Positions 12,381 to 55,134 of a stretch of DNA of 64,000 nucleotides are shown here, piece by piece. Each line of letters begins with the position of its first letter. Within the stretch, counting starts at the first letter, position 1. Both the position numbers and the translations under genes were made by a program. The notes below the pieces were generated by a model. That model was not told where the DNA came from and made no database searches. It saw only the letters and a list, made by a program, of their open reading frames with translations. The DNA is taken from the NCBI RefSeq assembly GCF_006345805.1, contig NC_043005.1, positions 76,570,001 to 76,634,000 of the forward strand, read 5' to 3'. The stretch comes from Octopus sinensis. Lineage: Eukaryota.

Positions 12381-12470
12381 CATGTCCCATTTCTGATGTG
12401 AAGAAAGCCGGAGTGTAGACTCGTTTTCCTCATATATTTCGTACATTGTTATATCTCAAATTGCAATAAT

Positions 12471-32668: not shown

Positions 32669-33325
32669 GCTTTCTATCAAGTTTACTGAAAAGTATCAAT
32701 ATTTGCAATCTTCCCATTTACATACTTAGTGGACGCCTTCATTATGGAAAGTACTATTTTGAGGCTTAACTATAATACATACAAAGCAATTTCTTCGACA
32801 AATTCCACTCTTCTATCTGCTTAAATATTCTTATTAAACTAGTAGATCACTAACACTGGTGACATTTCTAGCGTATTTCTATATAACGCAAAAAGAAAAA
32901 ATTACAGGTTATCATATAATTTCTTGCTGTTATAGACTTTAGCATATAACCATCGAATATTTGAATAATAAAGGATGCAAAATTTAGTACCAAAATCTAC
33001 ATAAAAACAGAAACCAATTTATTGGAATATTTCCTGTCTGGAATATTTATACACAATACTTCTGCTTTGTGTTTCAAATGTACGATTATTTGATGAAGAT
33101 ATTGTTGTTGAATTTAAAAGTTAGTAGATTACTGTTGCTGTGTTAATTTAAATCACTGTTATTTTGGTGTCTTTTCAATAAGACGGTTAGTGACCTTCGT
33201 GCGAAGGTTGTGTACGTAGTTTCCCCCCCCCCGCGGGGGAATTATTGTGTGTCTTCGTGTATGAAACACATCCAAAAACAAAAAAAAAAAAAAAATATTT
33301 TTCTACAAACGGCTGCAAAGCCAGA

Positions 33326-34677
33326 ATGTCTTTGGAAGGCAGTGAATGCAAACTGGAAGAAAAACTCGAAATGGAATTCCCCATTTCCTATTCACCTATC
33401 TCAGGTGATGAAGACTCTCAAGCCTCGGGTGAGGGAAGCTCGCCGGCGGTGACACCGGAAAAAGAATCGGCGGTAACGCCAGGAAAAAAGGCCCCAGCAA
33501 AAAAGTTTGCGGAAGTTGTAGGGCGCAAACAGAAAAACATAAATATAGAAAACCTGGATAAATATGAAGACCTTCTAAAAAAGAAGGAAATGAAATTGCA
33601 GTTAAAAAAGATGTGGAAAAAAAGGAAGAGATTGAAAAGAAAAGAATTATTTACAAGACATACAGCATGACTACAAAAAGTATACAAAAAGTGGAAGAGT
33701 GTAAAATAGAGGAGTGCCTGAAGGCAATCAGAAAAGATATCACATATATAAACAGAGGAAGACGGTTCGGAACGGTAGAAGTGAGGTTCAGGACCGAAGA
33801 AATAGCTAAGAGGCTATCTACAGAACCTCAGAAAGCAGGAAACCTAGTCCTTCTACCCTTGTACAAAGGAAGAAGGACTTCAAAGATAGTGATGAGGAAT
33901 ATTCCCCCAGAGGCGGACGCCTCATGCCTGGTGGCGGCAGTGATGCTGGGCCTGAAGGAAAAAATCAATATCCTCCAAGCTACAGTGGAGGAGGAGGGAT
34001 TTTGGCAGGGCCAGATTATCACAATGGCAATACAAGCGGAGGCCCAGACACTGGAAGAAATACCAGAGGTGCTGAGGCTCGATGAGGAGGAGAGAGTACT
34101 AGTATTTGTAGAAGGAAGAAAACCGAGGTGCTTCGGCTGCGGAAAAAAGGGACACGTAAGAGCGGAGTGTCAACCTAAACCGCAGGTAGAAGCACCGTCG
34201 GAAAAAGAAGAAGCGGAGAAGAAAAAGAAAACAGAGGAAACCAAAGAGGTGGAAAAAGCTGCAAGTGGTGCAGAAAAGGAAAAAGAAAACGAAAAAGAGG
34301 AGGGGTGGTCTAAAGTTACCAAAAAAAAACGGAAAACTGAAACCACCCCTCAAGAAGAAGAAAACCTGAAGAAAAGAAAAGAGGTTACTTCTTCATTTAT
34401 GGCCATTAAGGCTACCAACAACAGACTTGTCAATGTGTTGGCAGCCATGGCCAAGGTGGAACGAATAAGAAAAATGAAAGACTTTATCATATACAAAATA
34501 GGCCGGAAGGACTACAGGAGGATAAAATCCGAATTCTTCCATGACGTGGGCCCTCTGAGACTGGACATGTCTCCATATCTATACGAGGGCCTACGTCGGA
34601 CTCCCCCACGAGCCAAGGAAAAAAATAAAAGTGAAGAAGAAGGCGAAACTGTCGAACAAGCCAAACTACTGATATAA
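33326..34677 (+). CDS. ORF1p (about 450 aa; RRM-like region, single CCHC knuckle CFGCGKKGHVRAEC, K/E-rich); one 1-nt frameshift in an A-run near 33576
   Basis: Joins track ORFs 33245-33670 and 33613-34677; intact homologue in unit 2. Start at MSLEGSECK is inferred. Confidence 0.85.
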
Positions 34678-34685
34678 GGTAAGTG

Positions 34686-37600
34686 ATGGACTACATTTAT
34701 GTTGGTTGTTTAAATGTGCGCGGCCTGGGATCAAGCGGGAAGCAAGGTCGCTTCCTTAATGATATCAGGTCGCGCAATTTGGATGTTATTGTTGCTACAG
34801 AAACCCGGTTAAAGGGGCCAAGAGATCTACTCCCACTGTTTGACGGCTACGAGAGTTTTGTCTCTCCGGCCAGTCCTACAGGCGGGGGTGGGGTGTTGGT
34901 CCTACTAAAAAGAAACCGGGTTTTTGAGAAAAAGTTAATTTTTTCAGACCCAGAAGGTAGGCTGGTCGTCATGGATTTGACGTTCAGTAACGGTAAAGTT
35001 ATCAGACTGGTTGCAATTTACGCACCCAACAGTATAAAAGGGCAAAGTGATTATTTTCGTGATCTAGAAAACTTTCTCGGTACTTCGCATTCATTAATTG
35101 TGCTAGGAGACTTTAACACAATTTGCAAAGCGGATGTAGATTGTGTTGGCTCGAATGCAGATAGAAAAGGTAACTCATGCTTCCTGGAACTGCTAAGCCG
35201 CTTTGAGCTAGCAGATCCTTATAGGTTGGAATATCCGAACGCTCCATTGTGGACATGGTCAAACAGCGACGGATCTTCCAGGTCATACATAGATAGAATT
35301 CTAATTAGAAAGGTAGACAGTAAAATAGCTAAGTGTCCACAGTTTCACCCGATAAGCTACAGTGATCATAAAATGGTCACTTGTAAGCTTGACATAGATA
35401 AGGTTAGAAATAGAGGATCCGGTTACTGGAAACTTAATACGTCCCTTTTGGCGATTAAGGAGTACAGAGACCGGATTAGGACCATAATTCAGAGGGCGCT
35501 GTCTGGTGCCATCATTAATAACAAATGGTGGTACGCCCTCAAACGAGCCATCAAGTTTGAGTCTATTAGATATAGCATAGGAGTAGTGTCTAGAGAGGCT
35601 AGCAGGGAAACTACTCTAGTTAAGGAAGTAGAGGAAGCCATGAAAACTGGCTCTGCGGCTCAGGTGGCGTCCAAGAGACTGGTGTTAAACCAGCACCTCG
35701 AGGCCAAACACATGGGCTGCATTGTCAGGGCTAGAATCCGTCATATGGGATGTGAAGGAATCAACGCCGTGAGATGGGCCCGAGTGGTGGAAGCCCGGAA
35801 TGGCAACGACGCCACGATTCGATCTTTGAAGAACCAACAAGGTGAGTTGATAGACGAACCCGAGGAGATGTGTGAGGCCTTTCAGGAGCACTTCGCTCAG
35901 CTTTTCGGTGAGTGCGGCGGGCTGGATAGGAGGAGGGCCTTTACGGACCTACTCGACGGGCTGCCGCGCTTATCGGGGCGAGATGCGGAGGGCTGTGAAG
36001 GGCCAATCACGCCTGAGGAGGTGGTGGAGGCAATGGCGGACTGCGGCGCGGGCAAGGCGCCGGGTTTGGATGGTCTACCCTACGAGTTATATAAGAGTAT
36101 GCCAGACTTGTTCGGACTCCTACTGACGGAGGTCTATGCGAACTGGCAGCAGAACGGGCTTATACCCAGATCTGTGCGCCGGGGAGTGGTGACTCTCGTC
36201 AGAAAGGACCCGAGCAAGGGGGAGTGCATTGATAATTTCAGGCCCATCACTCTGCTAAACACAGAGTTGAAGATTTTGGCCAAAGTGTTATCGAAAAGAT
36301 TGGCGCGTGTCGCGGATGGTCTGATCGGGGAGGCACAGACATGTGCCGTTCCGGGCAGAACCATTCAGGATAATCTCCATCTAATGCGGTACACTATAGA
36401 GGGGTTTAATAGTGATTCTGGCAAGGGTGGGGCACTGGTCCATTTAGACCAATCCAAAGCTTTTGATAGGGTCGACCATCGTTACCTGGTGTCTGCCCTG
36501 GCACAGTTTGGGCTGAGCCTTGGCTTCCTCAGGTGGATTATCCAAATTTACGACAACATCGACTCGGTAGTTCGGGTGAACGGCTTCTTGTCGAAGCCGT
36601 TCAAAATCAAACGCTCGGTTCGTCAAGGGTGTCCGCTCTCCCCGCTTTTGTACGTGATGGCTCTTGAGCCATTACTGCGAAAACTGAGCGGCATCCCGAG
36701 ACAGCCAGGTAATGGAAAATCAGTGTCAGCGTACGCGGACGACATCACCATCATCGTGACCGAAATGGACCACCTATGTAAAGTAGGCAAGGCCATAGAG
36801 GATTACGAGACGGTGACAGGAGCAAAAGTTAATCGCGAAAAGTCAGTCGGCTTGCAACTCGGCACCTGGAGAGGCAAGTCGATGCCTCCTGACAGCGTCG
36901 TGGGACGTTGGACGGAGGGTCCGATTAAACTGCTAGGGGTCTGGTTCGGTCCAGACCTCCAAATAGAGAAGAATTGGGGCGAGGTAACGAGCAAGGTGGC
37001 TGCAGTAGCCAAGACCTGGTCTTGGCGGTGGCTATCCTTGAAAGGGAGGGCGGAGGTGGCCAATGTGTTTATCGCATCGGTTATCACCTACCGCCTTTCC
37101 GTCGTTCCATGCCCTGATTCGTGGTTGATCAAGTTGGAAAGACAGCTCTTCTACTTCCTGTGGAAGGGCGGGAAACCACTTGTGAAACGCTCTACTTGCT
37201 GTCAACAACCGTTAAAGGGTGGGCTAGGGATGCCTTGGCTGTTGATGCGCAAACATGCGCTGAGGTTAAGACATCTGTGGCTCTACCTGGATGGTGAACG
37301 GGTGTGGTCTTCGCTAGCAGAACGGATGTTTCCCAAGTTCACCAGTTTCGGTGGATGGGAAACCTGGTTGAATCGTAGATCGAAACTGGGCACATGGTAT
37401 ACGGAGTGTCGAAAGGCTCTCCTGCTATTCCGTCGCTCGGGCAACGCATGCGGTGGGGGTTCCACCACATTCTTCTATAGAGGGTTGGTAGAGGCGAAAT
37501 GTGAAGACACCTTGGGGGAAACCCTGGGTCTCGACGATAATCAGCTGGCCAGTCTGTTCCGACGTACGTTCGAGCCGAAGACTCTGGACAACTTCCAGAA

Positions 37601-38084
37601 GTCTCTGGCATGGCAATGCTACAGAGGAGCTCTACCTGTTCGGGATAAACTCGCAAGGCACGGTGGCCAAGACAGTCCGATGTGTCCAAGATGCGGGCGG
37701 GATAGGGAAACCGTCCCGCACGCTATTGTTCATTGTTCGGTCGTGTCTGAGGTGTGGGTTTATGCCGAACAGCTGTTGTCAAGCACACGAAGAGTACAGC
37801 TGTCGACTGAGTGTATTAAAAAAATTGACCCACCAGATTTCCTCGCGAAAGAAGGTAAGAATTGTTTTCTCGTTGTGGTAGCAATTGCGAAAGAGGTGAT
37901 ATGGAAGACGAGAATGAAAGGTATACGGTCAGGCAAGTTCATATCCGGCCCTGGGTTGATGAATTACTTCATCTACCACCTGAAAAGGAAGATAGGGCTG
38001 GAGAGAAAATGCCTGACTAAAAGAGTGTATGAAGAACGATGGAAGGATGTAGCACGGAAGTTGAGAATGGATGACACCACATAA
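34686..38084 (+). CDS. ORF2p, 1132 aa: AP endonuclease, reverse transcriptase, C-terminal CX2CX8HX4C
   Basis: EN motifs LNVRGL, ATETR, IYAPN, GDFN, SYIDRIL, SDH; RT motifs FRPITLLN, LDQSKAFDRV, QGCPLSP, YADD; CPRC...HAIVHC. Confidence 0.97.
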   Translation: MDYIYVGCLNVRGLGSSGKQGRFLNDIRSRNLDVIVATETRLKGPRDLLPLFDGYESFVSPASPTGGGGVLVLLKRNRVFEKKLIFSDPEGRLVVMDLTFSNGKVIRLVAIYAPNSIKGQSDYFRDLENFLGTSHSLIVLGDFNTICKADVDCVGSNADRKGNSCFLELLSRFELADPYRLEYPNAPLWTWSNSDGSSRSYIDRILIRKVDSKIAKCPQFHPISYSDHKMVTCKLDIDKVRNRGSGYWKLNTSLLAIKEYRDRIRTIIQRALSGAIINNKWWYALKRAIKFESIRYSIGVVSREASRETTLVKEVEEAMKTGSAAQVASKRLVLNQHLEAKHMGCIVRARIRHMGCEGINAVRWARVVEARNGNDATIRSLKNQQGELIDEPEEMCEAFQEHFAQLFGECGGLDRRRAFTDLLDGLPRLSGRDAEGCEGPITPEEVVEAMADCGAGKAPGLDGLPYELYKSMPDLFGLLLTEVYANWQQNGLIPRSVRRGVVTLVRKDPSKGECIDNFRPITLLNTELKILAKVLSKRLARVADGLIGEAQTCAVPGRTIQDNLHLMRYTIEGFNSDSGKGGALVHLDQSKAFDRVDHRYLVSALAQFGLSLGFLRWIIQIYDNIDSVVRVNGFLSKPFKIKRSVRQGCPLSPLLYVMALEPLLRKLSGIPRQPGNGKSVSAYADDITIIVTEMDHLCKVGKAIEDYETVTGAKVNREKSVGLQLGTWRGKSMPPDSVVGRWTEGPIKLLGVWFGPDLQIEKNWGEVTSKVAAVAKTWSWRWLSLKGRAEVANVFIASVITYRLSVVPCPDSWLIKLERQLFYFLWKGGKPLVKRSTCCQQPLKGGLGMPWLLMRKHALRLRHLWLYLDGERVWSSLAERMFPKFTSFGGWETWLNRRSKLGTWYTECRKALLLFRRSGNACGGGSTTFFYRGLVEAKCEDTLGETLGLDDNQLASLFRRTFEPKTLDNFQKSLAWQCYRGALPVRDKLARHGGQDSPMCPRCGRDRETVPHAIVHCSVVSEVWVYAEQLLSSTRRVQLSTECIKKIDPPDFLAKEGKNCFLVVVAIAKEVIWKTRMKGIRSGKFISGPGLMNYFIYHLKRKIGLERKCLTKRVYEERWKDVARKLRMDDTT

Positions 38085-38576
38085 ATGTAAATCAGAACGA
38101 AACCAAAAGTATCAGTGGTGAGGCGGGGCTCGTGGGGTCCGAGCTGAACCCGCCCCCACTCCACCTGTAATGTCTTCCGGTCTGTTTTTTTCATTCGATT
38201 TTTATAATTTTTGCATTTTTTGTGAATTTTTGGAATTTTTAAACTCATCCTTTTGTAACCCCATCCGTGAATCTGACCCCACATCAGGTTGTATTGTCCC
38301 CTCTTTGTTGGCCCCTTGTGGGTAATAATAAAACAGATTATTTGATGAAGATATTGTTGTTGAATTTAAAAGTTAGTAGATTACTGTTGCTGTGTTAATT
38401 TAAATCACTGTTATTTTGGTGTCTTTTCAATAAGACGGTTAGTGACCTTCGTGCGAAGGTTGTGTACGTAGTTCCCCCCCCCGCGGGGGAATTATTGTGT
38501 GTCTTCGTGTATGAAACACATCCAAAAACAAAAAAAAAAAAAAAAATATTTTTCTACAAACGGCTGCAAAGCCAGA

Positions 38577-39929
38577 ATGTCTTTGGAAGGCAGTGAATGC
38601 AAACTGGAAGAAAAACTCGAAATGGAATTCCCCATTTCCTATTCACCTATCTCAGGTGATGAAGACTCTCAAGCCTCGGGTGAGGGAAGCTCGCCGGCGG
38701 TGACACCGGAAAAAGAATCGGCGGTAACGCCAGGAAAAAAGGCCCCAGCAAAAAAGTTTGCGGAAGTTGTAGGGCGCAAACAGAAAAACATAAATATAGA
38801 AAACCTGGATAAATATGAAGACCTTCTAAAAAAAGAAGGAAATGAAATTGCAGTTAAAAAAGATGTGGAAAAAAAGGAAGAGATTGAAAAGAAAAGAATT
38901 ATTTACAAGACATACAGCATGACTACAAAAAGTATACAAAAAGTGGAAGAGTGTAAAATAGAGGAGTGCCTGAAGGCAATCAGAAAAGATATCACATATA
39001 TAAACAGAGGAAGACGGTTCGGAACGGTAGAAGTGAGGTTCAGGACCGAAGAAATAGCTAAGAGGCTATCTACAGAACCTCAGAAAGCAGGAAACCTAGT
39101 CCTTCTACCCTTGTACAAAGGAAGAAGGACTTCAAAGATAGTGATGAGGAATATTCCCCCAGAGGCGGACGCCTCATGCCTGGTGGCGGCAGTGATGCTG
39201 GGCCTGAAGGAAAAAATCAATATCCTCCAAGCTACAGTGGAGGAGGAGGGATTTTGGCAGGGCCAGATTATCACAATGGCAATACAAGCGGAGGCCCAGA
39301 CACTGGAAGAAATACCAGAGGTGCTGAGGCTCGATGAGGAGGAGAGAGTACTAGTATTTGTAGAAGGAAGAAAACCGAGGTGCTTCGGCTGCGGAAAAAA
39401 GGGACACGTAAGAGCGGAGTGTCAACCTAAACCGCAGGTAGAAGCACCGTCGGAAAAAGAAGAAGCGGAGAAGAAAAAGAAAACAGAGGAAACCAAAGAG
39501 GTGGAAAAAGCTGCAAGTGGTGCAGAAAAGGAAAAAGAAAACGAAAAAGAGGAGGGGTGGTCTAAAGTTACCAAAAAAAAACGGAAAACTGAAACCACCC
39601 CTCAAGAAGAAGAAAACCTGAAGAAAAGAAAAGAGGTTACTTCTTCATTTATGGCCATTAAGGCTACCAACAACAGACTTGTCAATGTGTTGGCAGCCAT
39701 GGCCAAGGTGGAACGAATAAGAAAAATGAAAGACTTTATCATATACAAAATAGGCCGGAAGGACTACAGGAGGATAAAATCCGAATTCTTCCATGACGTG
39801 GGCCCTCTGAGACTGGACATGTCTCCATATCTATACGAGGGCCTACGTCGGACTCCCCCACGAGCCAAGGAAAAAAATAAAAGTGAAGAAGAAGGCGAAA
39901 CTGTCGAACAAGCCAAACTACTGATATAA
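38577..39929 (+). CDS. ORF1p, intact 450 aa
   Basis: Uninterrupted frame within track ORF 38499-39929. Confidence 0.9.
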   Translation: MSLEGSECKLEEKLEMEFPISYSPISGDEDSQASGEGSSPAVTPEKESAVTPGKKAPAKKFAEVVGRKQKNINIENLDKYEDLLKKEGNEIAVKKDVEKKEEIEKKRIIYKTYSMTTKSIQKVEECKIEECLKAIRKDITYINRGRRFGTVEVRFRTEEIAKRLSTEPQKAGNLVLLPLYKGRRTSKIVMRNIPPEADASCLVAAVMLGLKEKINILQATVEEEGFWQGQIITMAIQAEAQTLEEIPEVLRLDEEERVLVFVEGRKPRCFGCGKKGHVRAECQPKPQVEAPSEKEEAEKKKKTEETKEVEKAASGAEKEKENEKEEGWSKVTKKKRKTETTPQEEENLKKRKEVTSSFMAIKATNNRLVNVLAAMAKVERIRKMKDFIIYKIGRKDYRRIKSEFFHDVGPLRLDMSPYLYEGLRRTPPRAKEKNKSEEEGETVEQAKLLI

Positions 39930-39965
39930 GGTAAGTGATGGACTACATTTATGTTGGTTGTTTAA

Positions 39966-41657: not shown

Positions 41658-41925
41658 ATGTAAATCAGAACGAAACCAAAAGTATCAGTGGTGAGGCGGG
41701 GCTCGTGGGGTCCGAGCTGAACCCGCCCCCACTCCACCTGTAATGTCTTCCGGTCTGTTTTTTTTCATCCGATTTTTATAATTTTTGCATTTTTGTAAAT
41801 TTTTGGAATTTTTAAACTCATCCTTTTGTAAACCCCATCCGAAAATCTGACCCCACATCAGGTTGTATTGTCCCCTCTTTGTTGGCCCCTTGTGGGTAAT
41901 AATAAAACAGATTATTTGATGAAGA

Positions 41926-45482: not shown

Positions 45483-45498
45483 GATTATTTGATGAAGA

Positions 45499-48400
45499 TA
45501 TTGTTGTTGAATTTAAAAGTTAGTAGATTACTGTTGCTGTGTTAATTTAAATCACTGTTATTTTGGTGTCTTTTCAATAAGACGGTTAGTGACCTTCGTG
45601 CGAAGGTTGTGTACGTAGTTCCCCCCCCCCCCCCCCCCGCGGGGGAATTATTGTGTGTCTTCGTGTATGAAACACATCCAAAAACAAAAAAAAAAAAAAT
45701 ATTTTTCTACAAACGGCTGCAAAGCCAGAATGTCTTTGGAAGGCAGTGAATGCAAACTGGAAGAAAAACTCGAAATGGAATTCCCCATTTCCTATTCACC
45801 TATCTCAGGTGATGAAGACTCTCAAGCCTCGGGTGAGGGAAGCTCGCCGGCGGTGACACCGGAAAAAGAATCGGCGGTAACGCCAGGAAAAAAGGCCCCA
45901 GCAAAAAAGTTTGCGGAAGTTGTAGGGCGCAAACAGAAAAACATAAATATAGAAAACCTGGATAAATATGAAGACCTTCTAAAAAAAGAAGGAAATGAAA
46001 TTGCAGTTAAAAAAGATGTGGAAAAAAAGGAAGAGATTGAAAAGAAAAGAATTATTTACAAGACATACAGCATGACTACAAAAAGTATACAAAAAGTGGA
46101 AGAGTGTAAAATAGAGGAGTGCCTGAAGGCAATCAGAAAAGATATCACATATATAAACAGAGGAAGACGGTTCGGAACGGTAGAAGTGAGGTTCAGGACC
46201 GAAGAAATAGCTAAGAGGCTATCTACAGAACCTCAGAAAGCAGGAAACCTAGTCCTTCTACCCTTGTACAAAGGAAGAAGGACTTCAAAGATAGTGATGA
46301 GGAATATTCCCCCAGAGGCGGACGCCTCATGCCTGGTGGCGGCAGTGATGCTGGGCCTGAAGGAAAAAATCAATATCCTCCAAGCTACAGTGGAGGAGGA
46401 GGGATTTTGGCAGGGCCAGATTATCACAATGGCAATACAAGCGGAGGCCCAGACACTGGAAGAAATACCAGAGGTGCTGAGGCTCGATGAGGAGGAGAGA
46501 GTACTAGTATTTGTAGAAGGAAGAAAACCGAGGTGCTTCGGCTGCGGAAAAAAGGGACACGTAAGAGCGGAGTGTCAACCTAAACCGCAGGTAGAAGCAC
46601 CGTCGGAAAAAGAAGAAGCGGAGAAGAAAAAGAAAACAGAGGAAACCAAAGAGGTGGAAAAAGCTGCAAGTGGTGCAGAAAAGGAAAAGAAAACGAAAAA
46701 GAGGAGGGGTGGTCTAAAGTTACCAAAAAAAACGGAAAACTGAAACCACCCCTCAAGAAGAAGAAAACCTGAAGAAAAGAAAAGAGGTTACTTCTTCATT
46801 TATGGCCATTAAGGCTACCAACAACAGACTTGTCAATGTGTTGGCAGCCATGGCCAAGGTGGAACGAATAAGAAAAATGAAAGACTTTATCATATACAAA
46901 ATAGGCCGGAAGGACTACAGGAGGATAAAATCCGAATTCTTCCATGACGTGGGCCCTCTGAGACTGGACATGTCTCCATATCTATACGAGGGCCTACGTC
47001 GGACTCCCCCACGAGCCAAGGAAAAAAATAAAAGTGAAGAAGAAGGCGAAACTGTCGAACAAGCCAAACTACTGATATAAGGTAAGTGATGGACTACATT
47101 TATGTTGGTTGTTTAAATGTGCGCGGCCTGGGATCAAGCGGGAAGCAAGGGTGGGGCACTGGTCCATTTAGACCAATCCAAAGCTTTTGATAGGGTCGAC
47201 CATCGTTACCTGGTGTCTGCCCTGGCACAGTTTGGGCTGAGCCTTGGCTTCCTCAGGTGGATTATCCAAATTTACGACAACATCGACTCGGTAGTTCGGG
47301 TGAACGGCTTCTTGTCGAAGCCGTTCAAAATCAAACGCTCGGTTCGTCAAGGGTGTCCGCTCTCCCCGCTGTTGTACGTGATGGCTCTTGAGCCATTACT
47401 GCGAAAACTGAGCGGCATCCCGAGACAGCCAGGTAATGGAAAATCAGTGTCAGCGTACGCGGACGACATCACCATCATCGTGACCGAAATGGACCACCTA
47501 TGTAAAGTAGGCAAGGCCATAGAGGATTACGAGACGGTGACAGGAGCAAAAGTTAATCGCGAAAAGTCAGTCGGCTTGCAACTCGGCACCTGGAGAGGCA
47601 AGTCGATGCCTCCTGACAGCGTCGTGGGACGTTGGACGGAGGGTCCGATTAAACTGCTAGGGGTCTGGTTCGGTCCAGACCTCCAAATAGAGAAGAATTG
47701 GGGCGAGGTAACGAGCAAGGTGGCTGCAGTAGCCAAGACCTGGTCTTGGCGGTGGCTATCCTTGAAAGGGAGGGCGGAGGTGGCCAATGTGTTTATCGCA
47801 TCGGTTATCACCTACCGCCTTTCCGTCGTTCCATGCCCTGATTCGTGGTTGATCAAGTTGGAAAGACAGCTCTTCTACTTCCTGTGGAAGGGCGGGAAAC
47901 CACTTGTGAAACGCTCTACTTGCTGTCAACAACCGTTAAAGGGTGGGCTAGGGATGCCTTGGCTGTTGATGCGCAAACATGCGCTGAGGTTAAGACATCT
48001 GTGGCTCTACCTGGATGGTGAACGGGTGTGGTCTTCGCTAGCAGAACGGATGTTTCCCAAGTTCACTAGTTTCGGTGGATGGGAAACCTGGTTGAATCGT
48101 AGATCGAAACTGGGCACATGGTATACGGAGTGTCGAAAGGCTCTCCTGCTATTCCGTCGCTCGGGCAACGCCTGCGGTGGGGGTTCCACCACATTCTTCT
48201 ATAGAGGGTTGGTAGAGGCGAAATGTGAAGACACCTTGGGGGAAACCCTGGGTCTCGACGATAATCAGCTGGCCAGTCTGTTCCGACGTACGTTCGAGCC
48301 GAAGACTCTGGACAACTTCCAGAAGTCTCTGGCATGGCAATGCTACAGAGGAGCTCTACCTGTTCGGGATAAACTCGCAAGGCACGGTGGCCAAGACAGT

Positions 48401-49060
48401 CCGATGTGTCCAAGATGCGGGCGGGATAGGGAAACCGTCCCGCACGCTATTGTTCATTGTTCGGTCGTGTCTGAGGTGTGGGTTTATGCCGAACAGCTGT
48501 TGTCAAGCACACGAAGAGTACAGCTGTCGACTGAGTGTATTAAAAAAATTGACCCACCAGATTTCCTCGCGAAAGAAGGTAAGAATTGTTTTCTCGTTGT
48601 GGTAGCAATTGCGAAAGAGGTGATATGGAAGACGAGAATGAAAGGTATACGGTCAGGCAAGTTCATATCCGGCCCTGGGTTGATGAATTACTTCATCTAC
48701 CACCTGAAAAGGAAGATAGGGCTGGAGAGAAAATGCCTGACTAAAAGAGTGTATGAAGAACGATGGAAGGATGTAGCACGGAAGTTGAGAATGGATGACA
48801 CCACATAAATGTAAATCAGAACGAAACCAAAAGTATCAGTGGTGAGGCGGGGCTCGTGGGGTCCGAGCTGAACCCGCCCCCACTCCACCTGTAATGTCTT
48901 CCGGTCTGTTTTTTTTCATCCGATTTTTATAATTTTTGCATTTTTGTAAATTTTTGGAATTTTTAAACTCATCCTTTTGTAAACCCCATCCGAAAATCTG
49001 ACCCCACATCAGGTTGTATTGTCCCCTCTTTGTTGGCCCCTTGTGGGTAATAATAAAACA
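45499..49060 (+). mobile_element. Unit 4: internally deleted LINE
   Basis: Junction GCAAGG at 47145-47150; ORF1 45730-47080 with A-run indels near 46690 and 46730. Confidence 0.93.
47117..48808 (+). CDS. Deletion-created 563-aa RT-core ORF
   Basis: Identical protein to 39966-41657 in the ORF track. Confidence 0.6.
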   Translation: MCAAWDQAGSKGGALVHLDQSKAFDRVDHRYLVSALAQFGLSLGFLRWIIQIYDNIDSVVRVNGFLSKPFKIKRSVRQGCPLSPLLYVMALEPLLRKLSGIPRQPGNGKSVSAYADDITIIVTEMDHLCKVGKAIEDYETVTGAKVNREKSVGLQLGTWRGKSMPPDSVVGRWTEGPIKLLGVWFGPDLQIEKNWGEVTSKVAAVAKTWSWRWLSLKGRAEVANVFIASVITYRLSVVPCPDSWLIKLERQLFYFLWKGGKPLVKRSTCCQQPLKGGLGMPWLLMRKHALRLRHLWLYLDGERVWSSLAERMFPKFTSFGGWETWLNRRSKLGTWYTECRKALLLFRRSGNACGGGSTTFFYRGLVEAKCEDTLGETLGLDDNQLASLFRRTFEPKTLDNFQKSLAWQCYRGALPVRDKLARHGGQDSPMCPRCGRDRETVPHAIVHCSVVSEVWVYAEQLLSSTRRVQLSTECIKKIDPPDFLAKEGKNCFLVVVAIAKEVIWKTRMKGIRSGKFISGPGLMNYFIYHLKRKIGLERKCLTKRVYEERWKDVARKLRMDDTT

Positions 49061-49076
49061 GATTATTTGATGAAGA

Positions 49077-52000
49077 TATTGTTGTTGAATTTAAAAGTTA
49101 GTAGATTACTGTTGCTGTGTTAATTTAAATCACTGTTATTTTGGTGTCTTTTCAATAAGACGGTTAGTGACCTTCGTGCGAAGGTTGTGTACGTAGTTCC
49201 CCCCCCCCCCGCGGGGGAATTATTGTGTGTCTTCGTGTATGAAACACATCCAAAAACAAAAAAAAAAAAATATTTTTCTACAAACGGCTGCAAAGCCAGA
49301 ATGTCTTTGGAAGGCAGTGAATGCAAACTGGAAGAAAAACTCGAAATGGAATTCCCCATTTCCTATTCACCTATCTCAGGTGATGAAGACTCTCAAGCCT
49401 CGGGTGAGGGAAGCTCGCCGGCGGTGACACCGGAAAAAGAATCGGCGGTAACGCCAGGAAAAAAGGCCCCAGCAAAAAAGTTTGCGGAAGTTGTAGGGCG
49501 CAAACAGAAAAACATAAATATAGAAAACCTGGATAAATATGAAGACCTTCTAAAAAAAGAAGGAAATGAAATTGCAGTTAAAAAAGATGTGGAAAAAAAG
49601 GAAGAGATTGAAAAGAAAAGAATTATTTACAAGACATACAGCATGACTACAAAAGTATACAAAAAGTGGAAGAGTGTAAAATAGAGGAGTGCCTGAAGGC
49701 AATCAGAAAAGATATCACTTATATAAACAGAGGAAGACGGTTCGGAACAGTAGAAGTAAGGTTCAGGACCGAAGAAATAGCTAAGAGGCTATCTACAGAA
49801 CCTCAGAAAGCAGGAAACCTAGTTCTTCTACCCTTGTATAAAGGAAGAAGGACTTCAAAGATAGTGATGAGGAATATTCCCCCAGAGGCGGACGCCTCAT
49901 GCCTGGTGGCGGCAGTGATGCTGGGCCTGAAAGAAAAAATCAACATCCTCCAAGCTACAGTGGAGGAGGAGGGATTTTGGCAGGGCCAGATTATCACAAT
50001 GGCAATACAAGCGGAGGCCCAGACTCTGGAAGAAATACCAGAGGTGCTGAGGCTAGATGAGGAGGAGCGAGTACTAGTATTTGTAGAAGGAAGAAAACCG
50101 AGGTGCTTCGGCTGCGGAAAGAAGGGGCACGTGAGAGCGGAGTGTCAACCGAAACCGCAGGCAGAAGCACCGTCGGAAAAAGAAGAAACGGAGAAGAAAA
50201 AGGAAACCAAAGAGGTGGAAAAAGCTGCAAGTGGTGCAGAAAAGGAAAAAGAAAACGAAAAAGAGGAGGGGTGGTCTAAAGTTACCAAAAAAAAAACGGA
50301 AAACTGAAACCACCCCTCAAGAAGAAGAAAACCTGAAGAAAAGAAAAGAGGTTACTTCTTCATTTATGGCCATTAAGGCTACCAACAACAGACTTGTCAA
50401 TGTGTTGGCAGCCATGGCCAAGGTGGAACGAATAAGAAAAATGAAAGACTTTATCATATACAAAATAGGCCGGAAGGACTACAGGAGGATAAAATCCGAA
50501 TTCTTCCATGACGTGGGCCCTCTGGGACTGGACATGTCTCCATATCTATACGAGGGCCTACGTCGGACTCCCCCACGAGCCAAGGAAAAAAATAAAAGTG
50601 AAGAAGAAGGCGAAACTGTCGAACAAGCCAAACTACTGATATAAGGTAAGTGATGGACTACATTTATGTTGGTTGTTTAAATGTGCGCGGCCTGGGATCA
50701 AGCGGGAAGCAAGGTCGCTTCCTTAATGATATCAGGTCGCGCAATTTGGATGTTATTGTTGCTACAGAAACCCGGTTAAAGGGGCCAAGAGATCTACTCC
50801 CACTGTTTGACGGCTACGAGAGTTTTGTCTCTCCGGCCAGTCCTACAGGCGGGGGTGGGGTGTTGGTCCTACTAAAAAGAAACCGGGTTTTTGAGAAAAA
50901 GTTAATTTTTTCAGACCCAGAAGGTAGGCTGGTCGTCATGGATTTGACGTTCAGTAACGGTAAAGTTATCAGACTGGTTGCAATTTACGCACCCAACAGT
51001 ATAAAAGGGCAAAGTGATTATTTTCGTGATCTAGAAAACTTTCTCGGTACTTCGCATTCATTAATTGTGCTAGGAGACTTTAACACAATTTGCAAAGCGG
51101 ATGTAGATTGTGTTGGCTCGAATGCAGATAGAAAAGGTAACTCATGCTTCCTGGAACTGCTAAGCCGCTTTGAGCTAGCAGATCCTTATAGGTTGGAATT
51201 TCCGAACGCTCCATTGTGGACATGGTCAAACAGCGACGGATCTTCCAGGTCATACATAGATAGAATTCTAATTAGAAAGGTAGACAGTAAAATAGCTAAG
51301 TGTCCACAGTTTTACCCGATCAGCTACAGTGATCATAAAATGGTCACTTGTAAGCTTGACATAGATAAGGTTAGAAATAGAGGATCCGGTTACTGGAAAC
51401 TAAATACGTCCCTTTTGGCGATTAAGGAATACAGAGACCGGATTAGGACCATAATTCAGAGGGCGCTGTCTGGTGCCATCATTAATAACAAATGGTGGTA
51501 CGCCCTCAAACGAGCCATCAAGTTTGAGTCTATTAGATATAGCATAGGAGTAGTGGCTAGAGAGGCTAGAAGGGAAACTACTCTAGTTAAGGAATTAGAG
51601 GAAGCCATGAAAACTGGCTCTGCGGCTCAGGTGGCGTCCAAGAGACTGGTGTTAAACCAGCACCTCGAGGCCAAACACATGGGCTGCATTGTCAGGGCTA
51701 GAATCCGTCATATGGGATGTGAAGGAATCAACGCCGTGAGATGGGCCCGAGTGGTGGAAGCCCGGAATGGCAACGATGCCACGATTCGATCTTTGAAGAA
51801 CCAACAAGGTGAGTTGATAGACGAACCCGAGGAGATGTGTGAGGCCTTTCAGGAGCACTTCGCTCAGCTTTTCGGTGAGTGCGGCGGGCTGGATAGGAGG
51901 AGGGCCTTTACGGACCTACTCGACGGGCTGCCGCGCTTATCGGGGCGAGATGCGGAGGGCTGTGAAGGGCCAATCACGCCTGAGGAGGTGGTGGAGGCAA

Positions 52001-54302
52001 TGGCGGACTGCGGCGCGGGCAAGGCGCCGGGTTTGGATGGTCTACCCTACGAGTTATATAAGAGTATGCCAGACTTGTTCGGGCACCTACTGGCGGAGGT
52101 CTATGCGAACTGGCAGCAGAACGGGTTTATACCCAGATCTGTGCGCCGGGGAGTGGTGACTCTCGTCAGAAAGGACCCGAGCAAGGGGGAGTGCATTGAT
52201 AATTTCAGGCCCATCACTCTGCTAAACACAGAGTTGAAGATTTTGGCCAAAGTGTTATCGAAAAGATTGGCGCGTGTCGCGGATGGTCTGATCGGGGAGG
52301 CACAGACATGTGCCGTTCCGGGCAGAACCATTCAGGATAATCTCCATCTAATGCGGTACACTATAGAGGGGTTTAATAGTGATTCTGGCAAGGGTGGGGC
52401 ACTGGTCCATTTAGACCAATCCAAAGCTTTTGATAGGGTCGACCATCGTTACCTGGTGTCTGCCCTGGCACAGTTTGGGCTGAGCCTTGGCTTCCTCAGG
52501 TGGATTATCCAAATTTACGACAACATCGACTCGGTAGTTCGGGTGAACGGCTTCTTGTCGAAGCCGTTCAAAATCAAACGCTCGGTTCGTCAAGGGTGTC
52601 CGCTCTCCCCGCTTTTGTACGTGATGGCTCTTGAGCCATTACTGCGAAAACTGAGCGGCATCCCGAGACAGCCAGGTAATGGAAAATCAGTGTCAGCGTA
52701 CGCGGACGACATCACCATCATCGTGACCGAAATGGACCACCTATGTAAAGTAGGCAAGGCCATAGAGGATTACGAGACGGTGACAGGAGCAAAAGTTAAT
52801 CGCGAAAAGTCAGTCGGCTTGCAACTCGGCACCTGGAGAGGCAAGTCGATGCCTCCTGACAGCGTCGTGGGACGTTGGACGGAGGGTCCGATTAAACTGC
52901 TAGGGGTCTGGTTCGGTCCAGACCTCCAAATAGAGAAGAATTGGGGCGAGGTAACGAGCAAGGTGGCTGCAGTAGCCAAGACCTGGTCTTGGCGGTGGCT
53001 ATCCTTGAAAGGGAGGGCGGAGGTGGCCAATGTGTTTATCGCATCGGTTATCACCTACCGCCTTTCCGTCGTTCCATGCCCTGATTCGTGGTTGATCAAG
53101 TTGGAAAGACAGCTCTTCTACTTCCTGTGGAAGGGCGGGAAACCACTTGTGAAACGCTCTACTTGCTGTCAACAACCGTTAAAGGGTGGGCTAGGGATGC
53201 CTTGGCTGTTGATGCGCAAACATGCGCTGAGGTTAAGACATCTGTGGCTCTACCTGGATGGTGAACGGGTGTGGTCTTCGCTAGCAGAACGGATGTTTCC
53301 CAAGTTCACTAGTTTCGGTGGATGGGAAACCTGGTTGAATCGTAGATCGAAACTGGGCACATGGTATACGGAGTGTCGAAAGGCTCTCCTGCTATTCCGT
53401 CGCTCGGGCAACGCCTGCGGTGGGGGTTCCACCACATTCTTCTATAGAGGGTTGGTAGAGGCGAAATGTGAAGACACCTTGGGGGAAACCCTGGGTCTCG
53501 ACGATAATCAGCTGGCCAGTCTGTTCCGACGTACGTTCGAGCCGAAGACTCTGGACAACTTCCAGAAGTCTCTGGCATGGCAATGCTACAGAGGAGCTCT
53601 ACCTGTTCGGGATAAACTCGCAAGGCACGGTGGCCAAGACAGTCCGATGTGTCCAAGATGCGGGCGGGATAGGGAAACCGTCCCGCACGCTATTGTTCAT
53701 TGTTCGGTCGTGTCTGAGGTGTGGGTTTATGCCGAACAGCTGTTGTCAAGCACACGAAGAGTACAGCTGTCGACTGAGTGTATTAAAAAAATTGACCCAC
53801 CAGATTTCCTCGCGAAAGAAGGTAAGAATTGTTTTCTCGTTGTGGTAGCAATTGCGAAAGAGGTGATATGGAAGACGAGAATGAAAGGTATACGGTCAGG
53901 CAAGTTCATATCCGGCCCTGGGTTGATGAATTACTTCATCTACCACCTGAAAAGGAAGATAGGGCTGGAGAGAAAATGCCTGACTAAAAGAGTGTATGAA
54001 GAACGATGGAAGGATGTAGCACGGAAGTTGAGAATGGATGACACCACATAAATGTAAATCAGAACGAAACCAAAAGTATCAGTGGTGAGGCGGGGCTCGT
54101 GGGGTCCGAGCTGAACCCGCCCCCACTCCACCTGTAATGTCTTCCGGTCTGTTTTTTTCATTCGATTTTTATAATTTTTGCATTTTTTGTGAATTTTTGG
54201 AATTTTTAAACTCATCCTTTTGTAACCCCATCCGAAAATCTGACCCCACATCAGGTTGTATTGTCCCCTCTTTGTTGGCCCCTTGTGGGTAATAATAAAA
54301 CA
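49077..54302 (+). mobile_element. Unit 5: full-length LINE, partly divergent from unit 1
   Basis: ORF1 49301-50644 with A-run indels near 49652 and 50290; intact ORF2. Confidence 0.93.
50653..54051 (+). CDS. ORF2p, 1132 aa (EN-RT-Cys/His)
   Basis: Intact; differs from unit 1 at a few residues (EFPN/EYPN, FYP/FHP, VAREARR/VSREASR, KEL/KEV, GHLLAE/GLLLTE, GFI/GLI). Confidence 0.97.
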   Translation: MDYIYVGCLNVRGLGSSGKQGRFLNDIRSRNLDVIVATETRLKGPRDLLPLFDGYESFVSPASPTGGGGVLVLLKRNRVFEKKLIFSDPEGRLVVMDLTFSNGKVIRLVAIYAPNSIKGQSDYFRDLENFLGTSHSLIVLGDFNTICKADVDCVGSNADRKGNSCFLELLSRFELADPYRLEFPNAPLWTWSNSDGSSRSYIDRILIRKVDSKIAKCPQFYPISYSDHKMVTCKLDIDKVRNRGSGYWKLNTSLLAIKEYRDRIRTIIQRALSGAIINNKWWYALKRAIKFESIRYSIGVVAREARRETTLVKELEEAMKTGSAAQVASKRLVLNQHLEAKHMGCIVRARIRHMGCEGINAVRWARVVEARNGNDATIRSLKNQQGELIDEPEEMCEAFQEHFAQLFGECGGLDRRRAFTDLLDGLPRLSGRDAEGCEGPITPEEVVEAMADCGAGKAPGLDGLPYELYKSMPDLFGHLLAEVYANWQQNGFIPRSVRRGVVTLVRKDPSKGECIDNFRPITLLNTELKILAKVLSKRLARVADGLIGEAQTCAVPGRTIQDNLHLMRYTIEGFNSDSGKGGALVHLDQSKAFDRVDHRYLVSALAQFGLSLGFLRWIIQIYDNIDSVVRVNGFLSKPFKIKRSVRQGCPLSPLLYVMALEPLLRKLSGIPRQPGNGKSVSAYADDITIIVTEMDHLCKVGKAIEDYETVTGAKVNREKSVGLQLGTWRGKSMPPDSVVGRWTEGPIKLLGVWFGPDLQIEKNWGEVTSKVAAVAKTWSWRWLSLKGRAEVANVFIASVITYRLSVVPCPDSWLIKLERQLFYFLWKGGKPLVKRSTCCQQPLKGGLGMPWLLMRKHALRLRHLWLYLDGERVWSSLAERMFPKFTSFGGWETWLNRRSKLGTWYTECRKALLLFRRSGNACGGGSTTFFYRGLVEAKCEDTLGETLGLDDNQLASLFRRTFEPKTLDNFQKSLAWQCYRGALPVRDKLARHGGQDSPMCPRCGRDRETVPHAIVHCSVVSEVWVYAEQLLSSTRRVQLSTECIKKIDPPDFLAKEGKNCFLVVVAIAKEVIWKTRMKGIRSGKFISGPGLMNYFIYHLKRKIGLERKCLTKRVYEERWKDVARKLRMDDTT

Positions 54303-55134
54303 GATTATTTGATGAAGACTTCATAAATTTTTCAGCGCATTGTAGAGTAGAATGTGATTCCAGTAATTGTCAATAAAGGGCGAATACAATTGTTATTCAA
54401 CTTTTGTTTTGTCTTTATATTTTGACAGAAATGATTATTCTTTAAGCATTGATCTGTCTATCCCCACGCTCTCCCTTCTGATTACCTGTCTTGTCTTGTT
54501 GGATTATTGGCCTGATATGAGTTAGTTTAAACAACTTATGAAAGTTCATACATAATAGTTAGGTAAATAATCAGCTCTTAATTTGTCTCTTAAGTAGGTA
54601 TTGTTCTAATTTTATAATGTACAAGATGGTAAATAAAACAAGGTAATCAAATGTTTTCCATATTTTGTTCTATATTTTCATCTTTGAAACATGTGAAATG
54701 CACCAATAAATTCTTTGATAAATCTCCACTGCAGCCAAAAATGGAAAAAAAATAGAAACATTGCTATAGGGGCTCCGACTTTGGCTTCTTTATATCCATA
54801 ATCGTTGTGCAAAAATAACGAGAGATCTAAAAGAAAAATTAAATACATTTATCCATGGGTGTATCCAGCTGTATCAGGGATTTCAGGTAACCGCTTTCAG
54901 CTGTAATATAATTCTTCCTAATTTTGGCACAAGGCCAGCAATTTTAGGTGTGTGGGTAAGTCAATTACATCAATTCTAGTATTGAAATAGTACTTATTTT
55001 ATCAACTCCAAAGAATAGAATAAAAGTCGACCTCGGTGGAATGTGAATTCAGAACGTAAATACTAATGAAATGTCCCTAAGCATTTTGCTCGGTGTGCTA
55101 GACATTTCTGCCAGATCGCTGGCTCGATTAAGAC

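What the first reader, a model, noticed from the sequence alone, without database searches (positions are those of the whole stretch)
33084..54318. 21-kb head-to-tail LINE array in which every junction carries the same 16-bp target duplication
Seen: TSD-full-TSD-delta-TSD-delta-TSD-delta-TSD-full-TSD. All five units have the same complete 5' end and the same 3' end with no poly(A). The empty site reconstructs as ...CAAATGTAC GATTATTTGATGAAGA CTTCATAAA..., which looks like unique DNA, not an rRNA, snRNA or tRNA gene or a microsatellite. Established: independent TPRT copies are usually scattered and 5'-truncated; many Tx1-clade families are sequence-specific; tandem insertions can seed satellites. 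Inference: repeated integration at one regenerated site followed by unequal exchange. This makes it a retrotransposon turning into a coding macrosatellite, with two autonomous copies bracketing three endonuclease-less copies. Read-through from one unit into the next could supply full-length transcripts.
Basis: partly seen in the sequence, partly recalled or inferred. Interest (0 to 1): 0.88.

Follow-up and report, generated by a model that had tools for sequence, protein, structure and literature searches.

The report
Head-to-tail LINE array at one site
Five copies of an L1-type retrotransposon sit head-to-tail at one non-genic spot, with the same 16-bp copy of the insertion site at every junction; this fits a known route from transposon to tandem repeat (repeated insertion into one site, then unequal exchange), and a related LINE family in another genome forms the same kind of array.

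Summary
GATTATTTGATGAAGA occurs exactly six times and bounds five units: 5236, 3558, 3557, 3562 and 5226 bp.

The element is an L1-superfamily LINE. ORF1 has a CCHC knuckle. ORF2 has an APE endonuclease, a reverse transcriptase and zf-RVT. There is no poly(A); the element ends in AATAAAACA.

Two details of the finding need correcting:
- The three short units share one 1679-bp deletion (microhomology GCAAGG). It removes the endonuclease and also the N-terminal RT motifs.
- As assembled, neither long unit has an intact ORF1. Only unit 2 does.

Differences between units are clustered and mostly synonymous (30 S : 18 N, p≈2e-9; ORF1 dN/dS 0.06–0.19). The units therefore derive from several actively replicating lineages, not from one copy decaying in place. 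The variant pattern is a recombinant mosaic.

A related family (about 40% ORF2 identity) in another assembly has the same architecture: flank-X-unit-X-unit, with X a 17-mer. That array mixes 5'-truncated and full-length units, and a second subfamily occupies the same position.

Best reading: repeated TPRT into a preferred, regenerated site, followed by unequal exchange or gene conversion. This is the model known from the Drosophila R1 and hobo arrays. I rate it a new member of a known kind, of moderate interest. Tx1-clade membership and copy number were not tested.

The parts
33084..33099 (+). Copy 1 of the 16-bp target-site duplication (X), at the left edge of the array. Preceded by unique flank ...CAAATGTAC.
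33100..38335 (+). Unit 1, full length (5236 bp). ORF1 is split by a -1 change in an A-run near 33579. ORF2 is intact.
34686..38084 (+). ORF2 of unit 1 (1132 aa from the ATG): APE endonuclease, RT (YADD present) and a C-terminal zf-RVT zinc motif.
34742..36420 (+). The 1679-bp segment missing from units 2-4. GCAAGG is present at both breakpoints.
38336..38351 (+). X copy 2 (junction of units 1 and 2).
38352..41909 (+). Unit 2, deleted form (3558 bp).
38499..39929 (+). The only uninterrupted ORF1 (476 codons; likely ATG at 38511 or 38577). Has an RRM-like region and one CCHC knuckle (CFGCGKKGHVRAEC). Homologous to ORF1 of the related 6.4-kb family (E = 2e-16).
39966..41657 (+). Remnant ORF2 of unit 2 (563 aa). 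It starts out of frame and enters the RT frame at the deletion joint 39993/39994. It lacks the endonuclease and the N-terminal RT motifs. The same remnant lies at 43539-45230 and 47117-48808.
41910..41925 (+). X copy 3.
41926..45482 (+). Unit 3, deleted form. The 5' part of its ORF1 (alignment columns 284-773) carries all 17 substitutions relative to unit 2. The remaining ~2.8 kb is identical to unit 2.
45483..45498 (+). X copy 4.
45499..49060 (+). Unit 4, deleted form, 99.92% identical to unit 2.
49061..49076 (+). X copy 5.
49077..54302 (+). Unit 5, full length (5226 bp). ORF2 is intact (50653-54051). ORF1 has homopolymer indels and an in-frame 9-bp deletion. It differs from unit 1 at 35 positions, in blocks.
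54303..54318 (+). X copy 6, at the right edge of the array. Followed by unique flank CTTCATAAA...
38289..38332 (+). 3' tail of the LINE (the same in every unit). It is 87% identical over 46 bp to an internal tail of tRNA-derived SINEs elsewhere in the window.
54294..54299 (+). AATAAA hexamer 3 nt before the end of the element, present in every unit. Any 3' processing it directs would fall in X or beyond (inference).
   Evidence: sequence read directly
54312..54324 (.). Palindrome ATGAAG-A-CTTCAT spanning the right edge of the target duplication in the empty site.

Best explanation
This is an L1-superfamily LINE with stringent-type features: no poly(A), and a 3' tail shared with SINEs.

Proposed history (inferred): the element integrated by target-primed reverse transcription (TPRT) at ...GTAC|GATTATTTGATGAAGA|CTTC..., producing a 16-bp target duplication. 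Each insertion regenerates the target, so the site stayed available. At least two or three further TPRT events, from related but distinct active lineages, landed in it and gave flank-X-unit-X-unit-X-flank. Unequal exchange and gene conversion between the units then multiplied one internally deleted unit (deletion at a GCAAGG microhomology), homogenised most of ORF2 and the ends, and left a mosaic of lineage-specific blocks.

Shown:
- the architecture;
- the protein domains;
- the shared deletion;
- the clustered, mostly synonymous differences between units;
- the recombinant variant pattern;
- the same architecture in a related family.

Inferred:
- that the blocks entered by separate insertions rather than by ectopic gene conversion;
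- that the endonuclease or priming step prefers this site.
For: Architecture: six exact 16-mers, five units and exact duplication limits.

Domains: PF03372, PF00078 and PF13966 match ORF2. Human L1 ORF2p is the best solved-structure match (E = 3e-68 over residues 4-869).

Several active source lineages:
- ORF1, unit 2 vs unit 5: 14 synonymous, 3 non-synonymous; dN/dS 0.058, p = 1.5e-7.
- ORF1, unit 2 vs unit 3: 10 S, 7 N; dN/dS 0.19, p = 8e-4.
- All 5 differences in the shared part of ORF2 are synonymous.
- Overall 30 S: 18 N against ~22% expected synonymous, p = 1.9e-9.
- All 17 differences between units 2 and 3 lie in 490 of 3553 columns.

Exchange between units: one identical 1679-bp deletion in three units, and variant groupings {3,5}, {2,3} and {1,5} that violate the four-gamete rule.

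Related family (ORF2 ~40% identical, ORF1 homologous):
- It forms 6.4-kb head-to-tail arrays.
- Its junctions all carry GCAGACYAGAAGGTAAA. The same 17-mer lies at the left boundary next to unique flank (L007) and at the right boundary (L003, L009).
- Two units 5'-truncated at position 1477 and a full-length unit are all bounded by this intact 17-mer.
- At L011, a different ORF1 subfamily occupies the same position in a 91%-identical flank, with that locus's own 17-mer variant.
- L005 holds an older array with a different 16-mer junction sequence, 84 bp away in a paralogous flank.

Precedent: the double-insertion model, the R1 array with a 33-nt rDNA spacer and the hobo array with one 8-nt motif at every junction (PMC5932611).
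Against: - Only one locus of this family could be examined. Its genome is not in the searchable collections, so site preference is untested for this family.
- No unit in the window is 5'-truncated. Nothing in the window on its own proves a second TPRT event.
- The three deleted units share one deletion, so at least some units are duplicates and not insertions.
- Lineage-specific blocks could have entered by ectopic gene conversion from dispersed active copies.
- The support from the related family is by analogy, at ~40% protein identity.
- Several of the related loci share homologous flanks, so their independence is uncertain. Solitary relatives at other targets (L002/L010, L006, L008, L012) show that specificity there is relaxed.
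- Copy number rests on one assembly.
Confidence: 0.6

Rival explanations
1. There was a single insertion. The first dimer arose by slippage or unequal exchange between the two 16-bp target duplications, and the array then grew by unequal exchange. The lineage-specific blocks were imported later by ectopic gene conversion from dispersed active copies.
For: - The architecture is identical under this model.
- All heads, tails and 16-mers are identical.
- The three deleted units must be duplicates of each other.
- The mosaic pattern shows that exchange is frequent.
Against: - Exchange between 16-bp repeats is a poor way to start an array.
- The model needs repeated conversion from at least two other active lineages.
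- The related family shows truncated and full-length units bounded by the same junction sequence, and a second subfamily at the same position. Duplication alone does not produce this.
Confidence: 0.22
2. The 16-mer belongs to the element, as a terminal sequence or as a 5'/3' transduced tag. The array is then a concatemer made in one event by end-to-end template jumping of the reverse transcriptase, or by insertion of a multimeric transcript.
For: In the related family, the one independent full-length solitary copy (L002/L010) carries GCAGACTAAWAGTTTTG in front of its head, inside its own target duplication. The first 8 nt of this match the array's junction 17-mer.
Against: - In the window, no other direct repeat flanks the array. 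The 16-mer itself is the only duplication and sits at both outer edges.
- A template-jump concatemer should end tail-to-flank on the right.
- The junction sequence differs between arrays of the related family (L005, L011 and L007) and tracks the local flank.
- The units come from different lineages.
Confidence: 0.06
3. This is an assembly artefact: one or two real units were expanded or mis-ordered by the assembler.
For: - The units are 99.2-99.9% identical.
- Every 1-bp indel lies in a homopolymer run, which is typical of noisy long-read consensus.
Against: - The units carry unit-specific, codon-position-biased substitution blocks and two structural forms in a fixed order.
- The related family shows arrays on several long contigs of an independent assembly.
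Confidence: 0.07

Closest known systems
Tandem array of the R1 non-LTR retrotransposon on the D. melanogaster X chromosome (Kidd & Glover 1980; Roiha et al. 1981; as summarised in PMC5932611)
   Same: LINE units lie head-to-tail, separated by an identical short duplication of the target (33 nt of rDNA). The array is explained by two insertions at one site followed by unequal exchange.
   Different: R1 belongs to the R1 clade and is strictly specific for one site in the multicopy 28S gene. Here the element is of the L1 superfamily and the target is non-genic DNA with no RNA-gene signature. The units also still carry long ORFs that show purifying selection between units.
Double-insertion tandems of P-element and hobo, and the hobo array with one 8-nt motif at every junction (McGurk & Barbash 2018, PMC5932611)
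   Same: A copy of the target duplication sits at each junction and one locus expands into an array. This is the general route from transposon to satellite.
   Different: Those are DNA transposons with 8-bp duplications. In that study most non-LTR tandems are tail-to-internal (5'-truncated), whereas all five units here share the same head.
Tx group of L1-clade LINEs with target-specific insertion (frog Tx1; PMC3747384). From my own knowledge: Keno, Kibi, Koshi, Mutsu and Dewa of Kojima & Fujiwara 2004.
   Same: The coding layout is L1-like (ORF1 with a CCHC knuckle; ORF2 with APE, RT and a C-terminal zinc motif). The same site is apparently used repeatedly.
   Different: - Placement in the Tx group was not tested.
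- Known Tx-group targets are repeats (another transposon, snRNA or rRNA genes, microsatellites). The target here looks single-copy within the window.
- The related family here also inserts at other sequences.
HeT-A/TART/TAHRE telomeric arrays of Drosophila, including 'promoting in tandem' (Danilevskaya et al. 1997; from my own knowledge)
   Same: LINEs lie head-to-tail, so an upstream neighbour could drive or extend transcripts of the next unit. One solitary relative carries junction sequence at its 5' end.
   Different: Telomeric arrays sit at chromosome ends, have no target duplications, and have oligo(A) and variable 5' truncations at their junctions. Here the array is internal and has an exact target duplication at every junction.
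Stringent-type LINE/SINE pairs that share a 3' tail (PMC3747384)
   Same: There is no poly(A). The last ~46 bp of the LINE recur as a SINE tail in the same window. In the related family, a terminal hairpin shows compensatory changes.
   Different: In the SINE copies seen here, the shared tail is internal to dimeric SINEs, so current mobilisation by this LINE is not shown.

Membership tests
L1-superfamily non-LTR retrotransposon | ORF2 has an N-terminal APE-type endonuclease followed by a reverse transcriptase | tested here: met
   PF03372 E = 1.6e-16 (residues 10-229) and PF00078 E = 5e-31 (residues 513-754). Human L1 ORF2p is the best solved-structure match, E = 3e-68 over residues 4-869.
L1-superfamily non-LTR retrotransposon | C-terminal cysteine-rich zinc motif in ORF2 | tested here: met
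   PF13966 zf-RVT, E = 2.3e-9, residues 973-1025.
L1-superfamily non-LTR retrotransposon | A separate upstream ORF1 encoding a nucleic-acid-binding protein | tested here: inconclusive
   A 476-codon ORF1 with one CCHC knuckle is visible. Pfam zf-CCHC reaches only E = 0.068, below its cut-off. ORF1 is homologous to that of the related family, E = 2e-16.
L1-superfamily non-LTR retrotransposon | Variable-length target duplications from TPRT, and a 3' poly(A) | tested here: not met
   A 16-bp duplication is present, but there is no poly(A). The element ends ...AATAATAAAACA. This departs from mammalian-type L1. Its 3' end looks like the stringent type instead.
Tx group (target-specific L1-clade LINEs) | Phylogenetic placement of the RT or endonuclease with Tx1 and its relatives | not tested
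Named database hits were only generic 'LINE-1 reverse transcriptase-like'.
Tx group (target-specific L1-clade LINEs) | All or most copies inserted at one defined target sequence | not testable with these tools
   No other copy of this family lies in the window or in the collections. The related family gives a mixed result:
- Repeated use of one position.
- Solitary copies at other sequences.
- Three independent target duplications that begin with GCAG.
Transposon tandem array formed by double insertion and unequal exchange | A copy of the target duplication at every internal junction and at both outer edges | tested here: met
   Six identical 16-mers with exact limits.
Transposon tandem array formed by double insertion and unequal exchange | Evidence that at least two units entered by separate insertion events | tested here: inconclusive
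   The window has no differing 5' truncations. The differences between units are clustered and under purifying selection, which indicates several active source lineages, but ectopic gene conversion is not excluded. The related family has truncated and full-length units bounded by one junction sequence.
Transposon tandem array formed by double insertion and unequal exchange | Evidence of expansion or exchange between units | tested here: met
   The same 1679-bp deletion occurs in three units, and the variant groupings violate the four-gamete rule.
Telomeric LINE arrays (HeT-A/TART type) | Located at a chromosome end, with no target duplication and with oligo(A) or truncated junctions | tested here: not met
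   The array is internal, with unique flanks on both sides and an exact target duplication at each junction. The telomere-like repeats 4 kb away are interstitial.

The most novel reading that the evidence does not exclude
This LINE lineage may habitually live as self-renewing head-to-tail arrays at private, non-genic sites.

The AATAAA signal sits at the very end of the element. Transcripts would therefore end in, or just past, the neighbouring target duplication and carry it as a 3' tag. That tag could base-pair with the nicked donor site and guide new cDNA back into the same junction. This would work like R1/R2-style target annealing, except that each locus has its own address. Upstream units could supply promoter activity or read-through for the next unit, as in HeT-A.

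This would explain three things:
- Arrays recur in two families and two genomes with different junction sequences.
- The units stay under purifying selection.
- One solitary relative carries junction sequence at its 5' end.
Probability: 0.15. Interest if true: 0.75.

Novelty: new member of a known kind. Interest (0 to 1): 0.48.

Why it matters
Tandem LINE arrays with the target duplication preserved at every junction are the intermediate predicted between a dispersed transposon and a satellite. Clean examples in which the units are still coding are few.

Selection is visible between the units here, so the array was assembled from active lineages and is not a decaying duplicate. A related family in another genome builds the same structure. 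Array formation may therefore be a property of this LINE lineage: site preference, or possibly homing to occupied sites.

That gives a concrete system for three questions:
- How does an L1-type endonuclease or priming step acquire site preference?
- How do internally deleted units that retain ORF1 spread inside arrays?
- Are such arrays source loci for dispersed copies?

Tried and rejected
- **RNA-gene target.** I looked for an RNA gene, tRNA or microsatellite at the target. Rfam at gathering threshold on the whole window, Rfam at E ≤ 1 on both flanks, ARAGORN and TRF found nothing.
- **Other copies in the window.** blastn and tblastn found only the 46-bp tail match to SINEs.
- **Other copies in public collections.** An exact 26-mer of the tail gave no match in JGI metagenome contigs or IMG/VR. 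The protein search gave no relative above 57% identity, so this genome is not in the collection.
- **Organism.** Paper searches on the assembly accession and its contig prefix found nothing useful. The organism remains unknown. The tRNA-SINE reminded me of cephalopod repeats, but that is memory only and was not tested. The assembly holding the related family lacks this SINE.
- **3' hairpin in the window's element.** The fold energy is no better than shuffled sequence (z = -0.11), so I make no structure claim for this family.
- **Target guided by junction sequence.** I tested whether the solitary relative's target resembles the array's junction 17-mer, as RNA-guided target choice would predict. 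It is not significant (p = 0.11).
- **In-place neutral decay of one duplicated copy.** Rejected by the synonymous excess.
- **Telomeric-array model.** Rejected: the array is internal and has target duplications.
- **ORF1 domains.** Pfam gave no family above its cut-off.
Full report
**1. The observation**

GATTATTTGATGAAGA occurs six times, all exact and all on the + strand, at 33084, 38336, 41910, 45483, 49061 and 54303. Shuffled sequence gives 0.17 matches even with two mismatches allowed. Reading the junctions shows one tail (...GGCCCCTTGTGGGTAATAATAAAACA) before the 16-mer and one head (TATTGTTGTTGAATTTAAAAG...) after it at all four internal junctions.

The first 16-mer follows unrelated flank (...TTTCAAATGTAC). 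The last is followed by unrelated flank (CTTCATAAATTTTTC...). The bases next to the repeat differ on both sides, so the duplication is exactly 16 bp.

The five units are 5236, 3558, 3557, 3562 and 5226 bp. The region has 45-52% G+C against 30-38% in the flanks. The described layout is correct.

**2. What the unit is**

The long units carry two ORFs.
- ORF2 (34686-38084 in unit 1; 50653-54051 in unit 5) matches Exo_endo_phos (E = 1.6e-16), RVT_1 (E = 5e-31) and zf-RVT (E = 2e-9).
- Its best match among solved structures is human LINE-1 ORF2p (E = 3e-68 over residues 4-869). R2 proteins follow far behind.
- ORF1 is uninterrupted only in unit 2 (38499-39929) and contains one CCHC knuckle. Pfam does not reach its cut-off on it.

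This is an L1-superfamily LINE. I could not test whether it belongs to the Tx group. There is no poly(A), and the element ends in AATAAAACA.

**3. The short units**

Units 2-4 share one identical 1679-bp deletion (34742-36420 of unit 1), with GCAAGG at both breakpoints. It removes ORF2 residues ~20-579: the endonuclease, the linker and the N-terminal RT motifs.
- The remnant ORF matches RVT_1 only from profile position 69 of 205.
- It keeps the LDQSKAFD and YADD motifs but lacks the upstream finger motifs.

These units are therefore RT-defective as well as endonuclease-less.

**4. Coding state of the units**

As assembled, ORF1 is frameshifted in units 1, 3, 4 and 5. Every 1-bp indel between units lies in an A, C or T run of five or more bases. 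They may be real slippage or consensus error. Either way, 'two autonomous copies' is not established. On paper the array encodes a full protein set only collectively: ORF1 from unit 2, ORF2 from units 1 and 5.

**5. How the units differ**

The units are 99.15-99.92% identical, but the differences are neither random in place nor in kind.
- All 17 substitutions between units 2 and 3 lie in alignment columns 284-773. None lies in the other ~2.8 kb.
- Unit 5 differs from the rest in a block at columns 653-1143. Units 1 and 5 differ at 13 further sites in the segment the short units lack.
- In ORF1, unit 2 vs unit 5 gives 14 synonymous and 3 non-synonymous changes (dN/dS 0.058, p = 1.5e-7). Unit 2 vs unit 3 gives 10 and 7 (dN/dS 0.19, p = 8e-4).
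- The five differences in the shared part of ORF2 are all synonymous.
- Overall 30 of 48 coding differences are synonymous where ~22% is expected (p = 1.9e-9).

A copy duplicated in place decays neutrally. These blocks instead diverged in lineages that had to stay functional to replicate. Variants group units {3,5}, {2,3} and {1,5} at different sites, which violates the four-gamete rule. The array is therefore also a recombinant mosaic.

**6. Surroundings**

No Rfam family, tRNA or microsatellite lies at or near the target. The flanks are not repeated in the window and hold no convincing ORF.

The right edge of the duplication and the flank together form the palindrome ATGAAG-A-CTTCAT.

The last 46 bp of the LINE are 87% identical to a tail found inside tRNA-derived SINEs elsewhere in the window. 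This is the classic sign of a stringent-type LINE/SINE relationship (PMC3747384). In the copies seen here, however, that tail is internal to dimeric SINEs.

**7. Relatives**

The genome of the window is not in the protein collection. The best hit is 57% identical, on a 3-kb contig.

The next relatives (~40% ORF2 identity; ORF1 homologous, E = 2e-16) come from long contigs of one ENA assembly. They form head-to-tail arrays with a 6.43-kb period.
- *Junctions.* Seven junctions in L003 and L004 read ...GAAATAAA-GCAGACTAGAAGGTAAA-ATTTTTTGTCTGAG....
- *Left boundary.* L007 reads unique flank, then GCAGACCAGAAGGTAAA, then a unit 5'-truncated at position 1477. The same 17-mer then precedes a second unit with the same truncation, and again a full-length unit.
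- *Right boundary.* L003 and L009 read tail, then GCAGACTAGAAGGTGAA, then flank.

This is the architecture of the window, flank-X-unit-X-unit-X-flank. A truncated and a full-length unit are both bounded by an intact X, which is the signature of separate TPRT events. Two units share one truncation, which is the signature of duplication.

Further loci in the same assembly:
- *L011.* About 88 bp of 91%-identical left flank is followed by a local variant of X (GCAGACTAGAAGTCGAA), which is repeated at the junction. Its units are 95% identical to the others over most of their length but only 68% in the part of ORF1 that still aligns. A different subfamily has therefore used the same position.
- *L005.* An older two-unit array of internally deleted copies that retain ORF1. 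Its junction sequence is a different 16-mer (AGAAGAAGCCTCCTCG / AGAATAAGCCGACGAG). It lies 84 bp away in a 76%-identical paralogue of the flank.
- *Solitary copies* exist at other sequences: L002/L010, L006, L008 and L012.
- *GCAG start.* Three independent target duplications begin with GCAG: the array 17-mer, GCAGCYGTAGTAAG and GCAGAGTWGTCTTCTT.

The related family therefore has a preference, not an absolute specificity.

The one independent full-length solitary copy carries GCAGACTAAWAGTTTTG in front of its head, inside its own duplication. This is best read as junction sequence transcribed from an array.

In the related family, a 6-7-bp hairpin just before (G)AAATAAA shows compensatory changes, for example CTGTGTA/TACACAG, CTATGTA/TACATAG, CTGTATA/TATACAG, CTTGTA/TACAAG and CGTTGTA/TACAACG.

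**8. Mechanism**

An insertion regenerates its target. Further insertions land in it. Unequal exchange and gene conversion then expand and homogenise the array. This is the double-insertion model, with the R1 array (33-nt rDNA spacer) and a hobo array (one 8-nt motif at every junction) as precedents (PMC5932611).

- Shown here: the architecture, the coding content, the shared deletion, the selection signal and the mosaic.
- Inferred: that the lineage blocks entered by insertion rather than ectopic gene conversion, and that the enzyme or the priming step prefers this site.

I put this at about 0.6. Single insertion plus duplication plus ectopic conversion gets about 0.2. 'The 16-mer is part of the element' and 'assembly artefact' each get well under 0.1.

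**9. A more novel reading that is not excluded**

In both families AATAAA sits at the very end of the element. Any 3' processing it directs would fall in the target duplication or in the next unit. Transcripts would then carry the local duplication as a 3' tag. That tag could anneal to the nicked donor site and bring new copies home. This would explain arrays at different junction sequences.

I have no direct evidence for it. The one test I could make, similarity of a solitary target to the junction 17-mer, was not significant (p = 0.11).

**10. Verdict**

The feature is real and correctly described, apart from the autonomy and 'endonuclease-less' details. It is best filed as a new member of a known kind: a transposon tandem array with the target duplication at every junction.

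Two points add interest. Purifying selection is visible between units, and the same architecture recurs in a related LINE family in another genome.

Still open: copy number, site specificity for this family, Tx-group membership and the organism.

Noticed in passing
window 28752-28830 and 28867-29029: Interstitial telomere-type repeats lie head-to-head, (CCCTAA)n then (TTAGGG)n, about 4 kb left of the array. This could be a relic of a fusion or an inverted duplication.
   Followed up: no
window 6164, 12450-12900, 13410-13900, 20246-20702, 28580, 30906, 63200-63700 (minus or plus strand): A family of tRNA-derived SINEs has at least 8 loci in 64 kb. Several are dimers inserted as one piece, with their own target duplications (ATATTCACCTCGT; ATTATTGCAATTTGAGAT). 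At 20246-20702 the SINE forms 2.5 head-to-tail units of 184 bp.
   Followed up: partly
window 12649-12688, 20354-20398, 20538-20582 vs 38289-38332: The first monomer of the dimeric SINEs ends in a tail 87% identical to the last 46 bp of the LINE. The SINEs' terminal tail (..ccaaaattttgggccttgtgcc..) instead resembles the tail of the related 6.4-kb LINE family found in another assembly. A LINE of that second kind probably also exists in this genome.
   Followed up: partly
window 54312-54324 (empty site): The right edge of the target duplication and the flank form a perfect palindrome, ATGAAG-A-CTTCAT. It is centred on the position where the second-strand cut must have fallen.
   Followed up: no
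window 54294-54299 (and the same place in each unit); L003 7728-7733: In both LINE families a canonical AATAAA lies at the very 3' end of the element. Polyadenylation directed by it would fall in the target duplication or in the next unit.
   Followed up: no
window 33222-33232 and 33266-33282 (and equivalents in each unit): The 5' UTR holds a C-run (9-18 C) and an A-run (13-17 A) whose lengths differ in every unit. This is either hypervariable slippage or consensus error.
   Followed up: partly
L005 4255-4613: In the related genome a different tRNA-like SINE has inserted into the head of the second unit of the old array. Both units there are internally deleted copies that retain ORF1, which parallels the deleted units of the window.
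   Followed up: partly
L009 3574-4303; L003 14560-15023: Short satellites (about 120-bp and about 90-bp units) lie directly next to the related array. The right flanks of L003 and L009 agree for only 247 bp, so that region is structurally polymorphic or duplicated.
   Followed up: no
L002 14125-14166, L003, L005, L006, L007, L008 tails: The terminal hairpin of the related LINE, just before (G)AAATAAA, keeps its pairing through compensatory changes between copies. This is consistent with stringent 3'-end recognition.
   Followed up: partly
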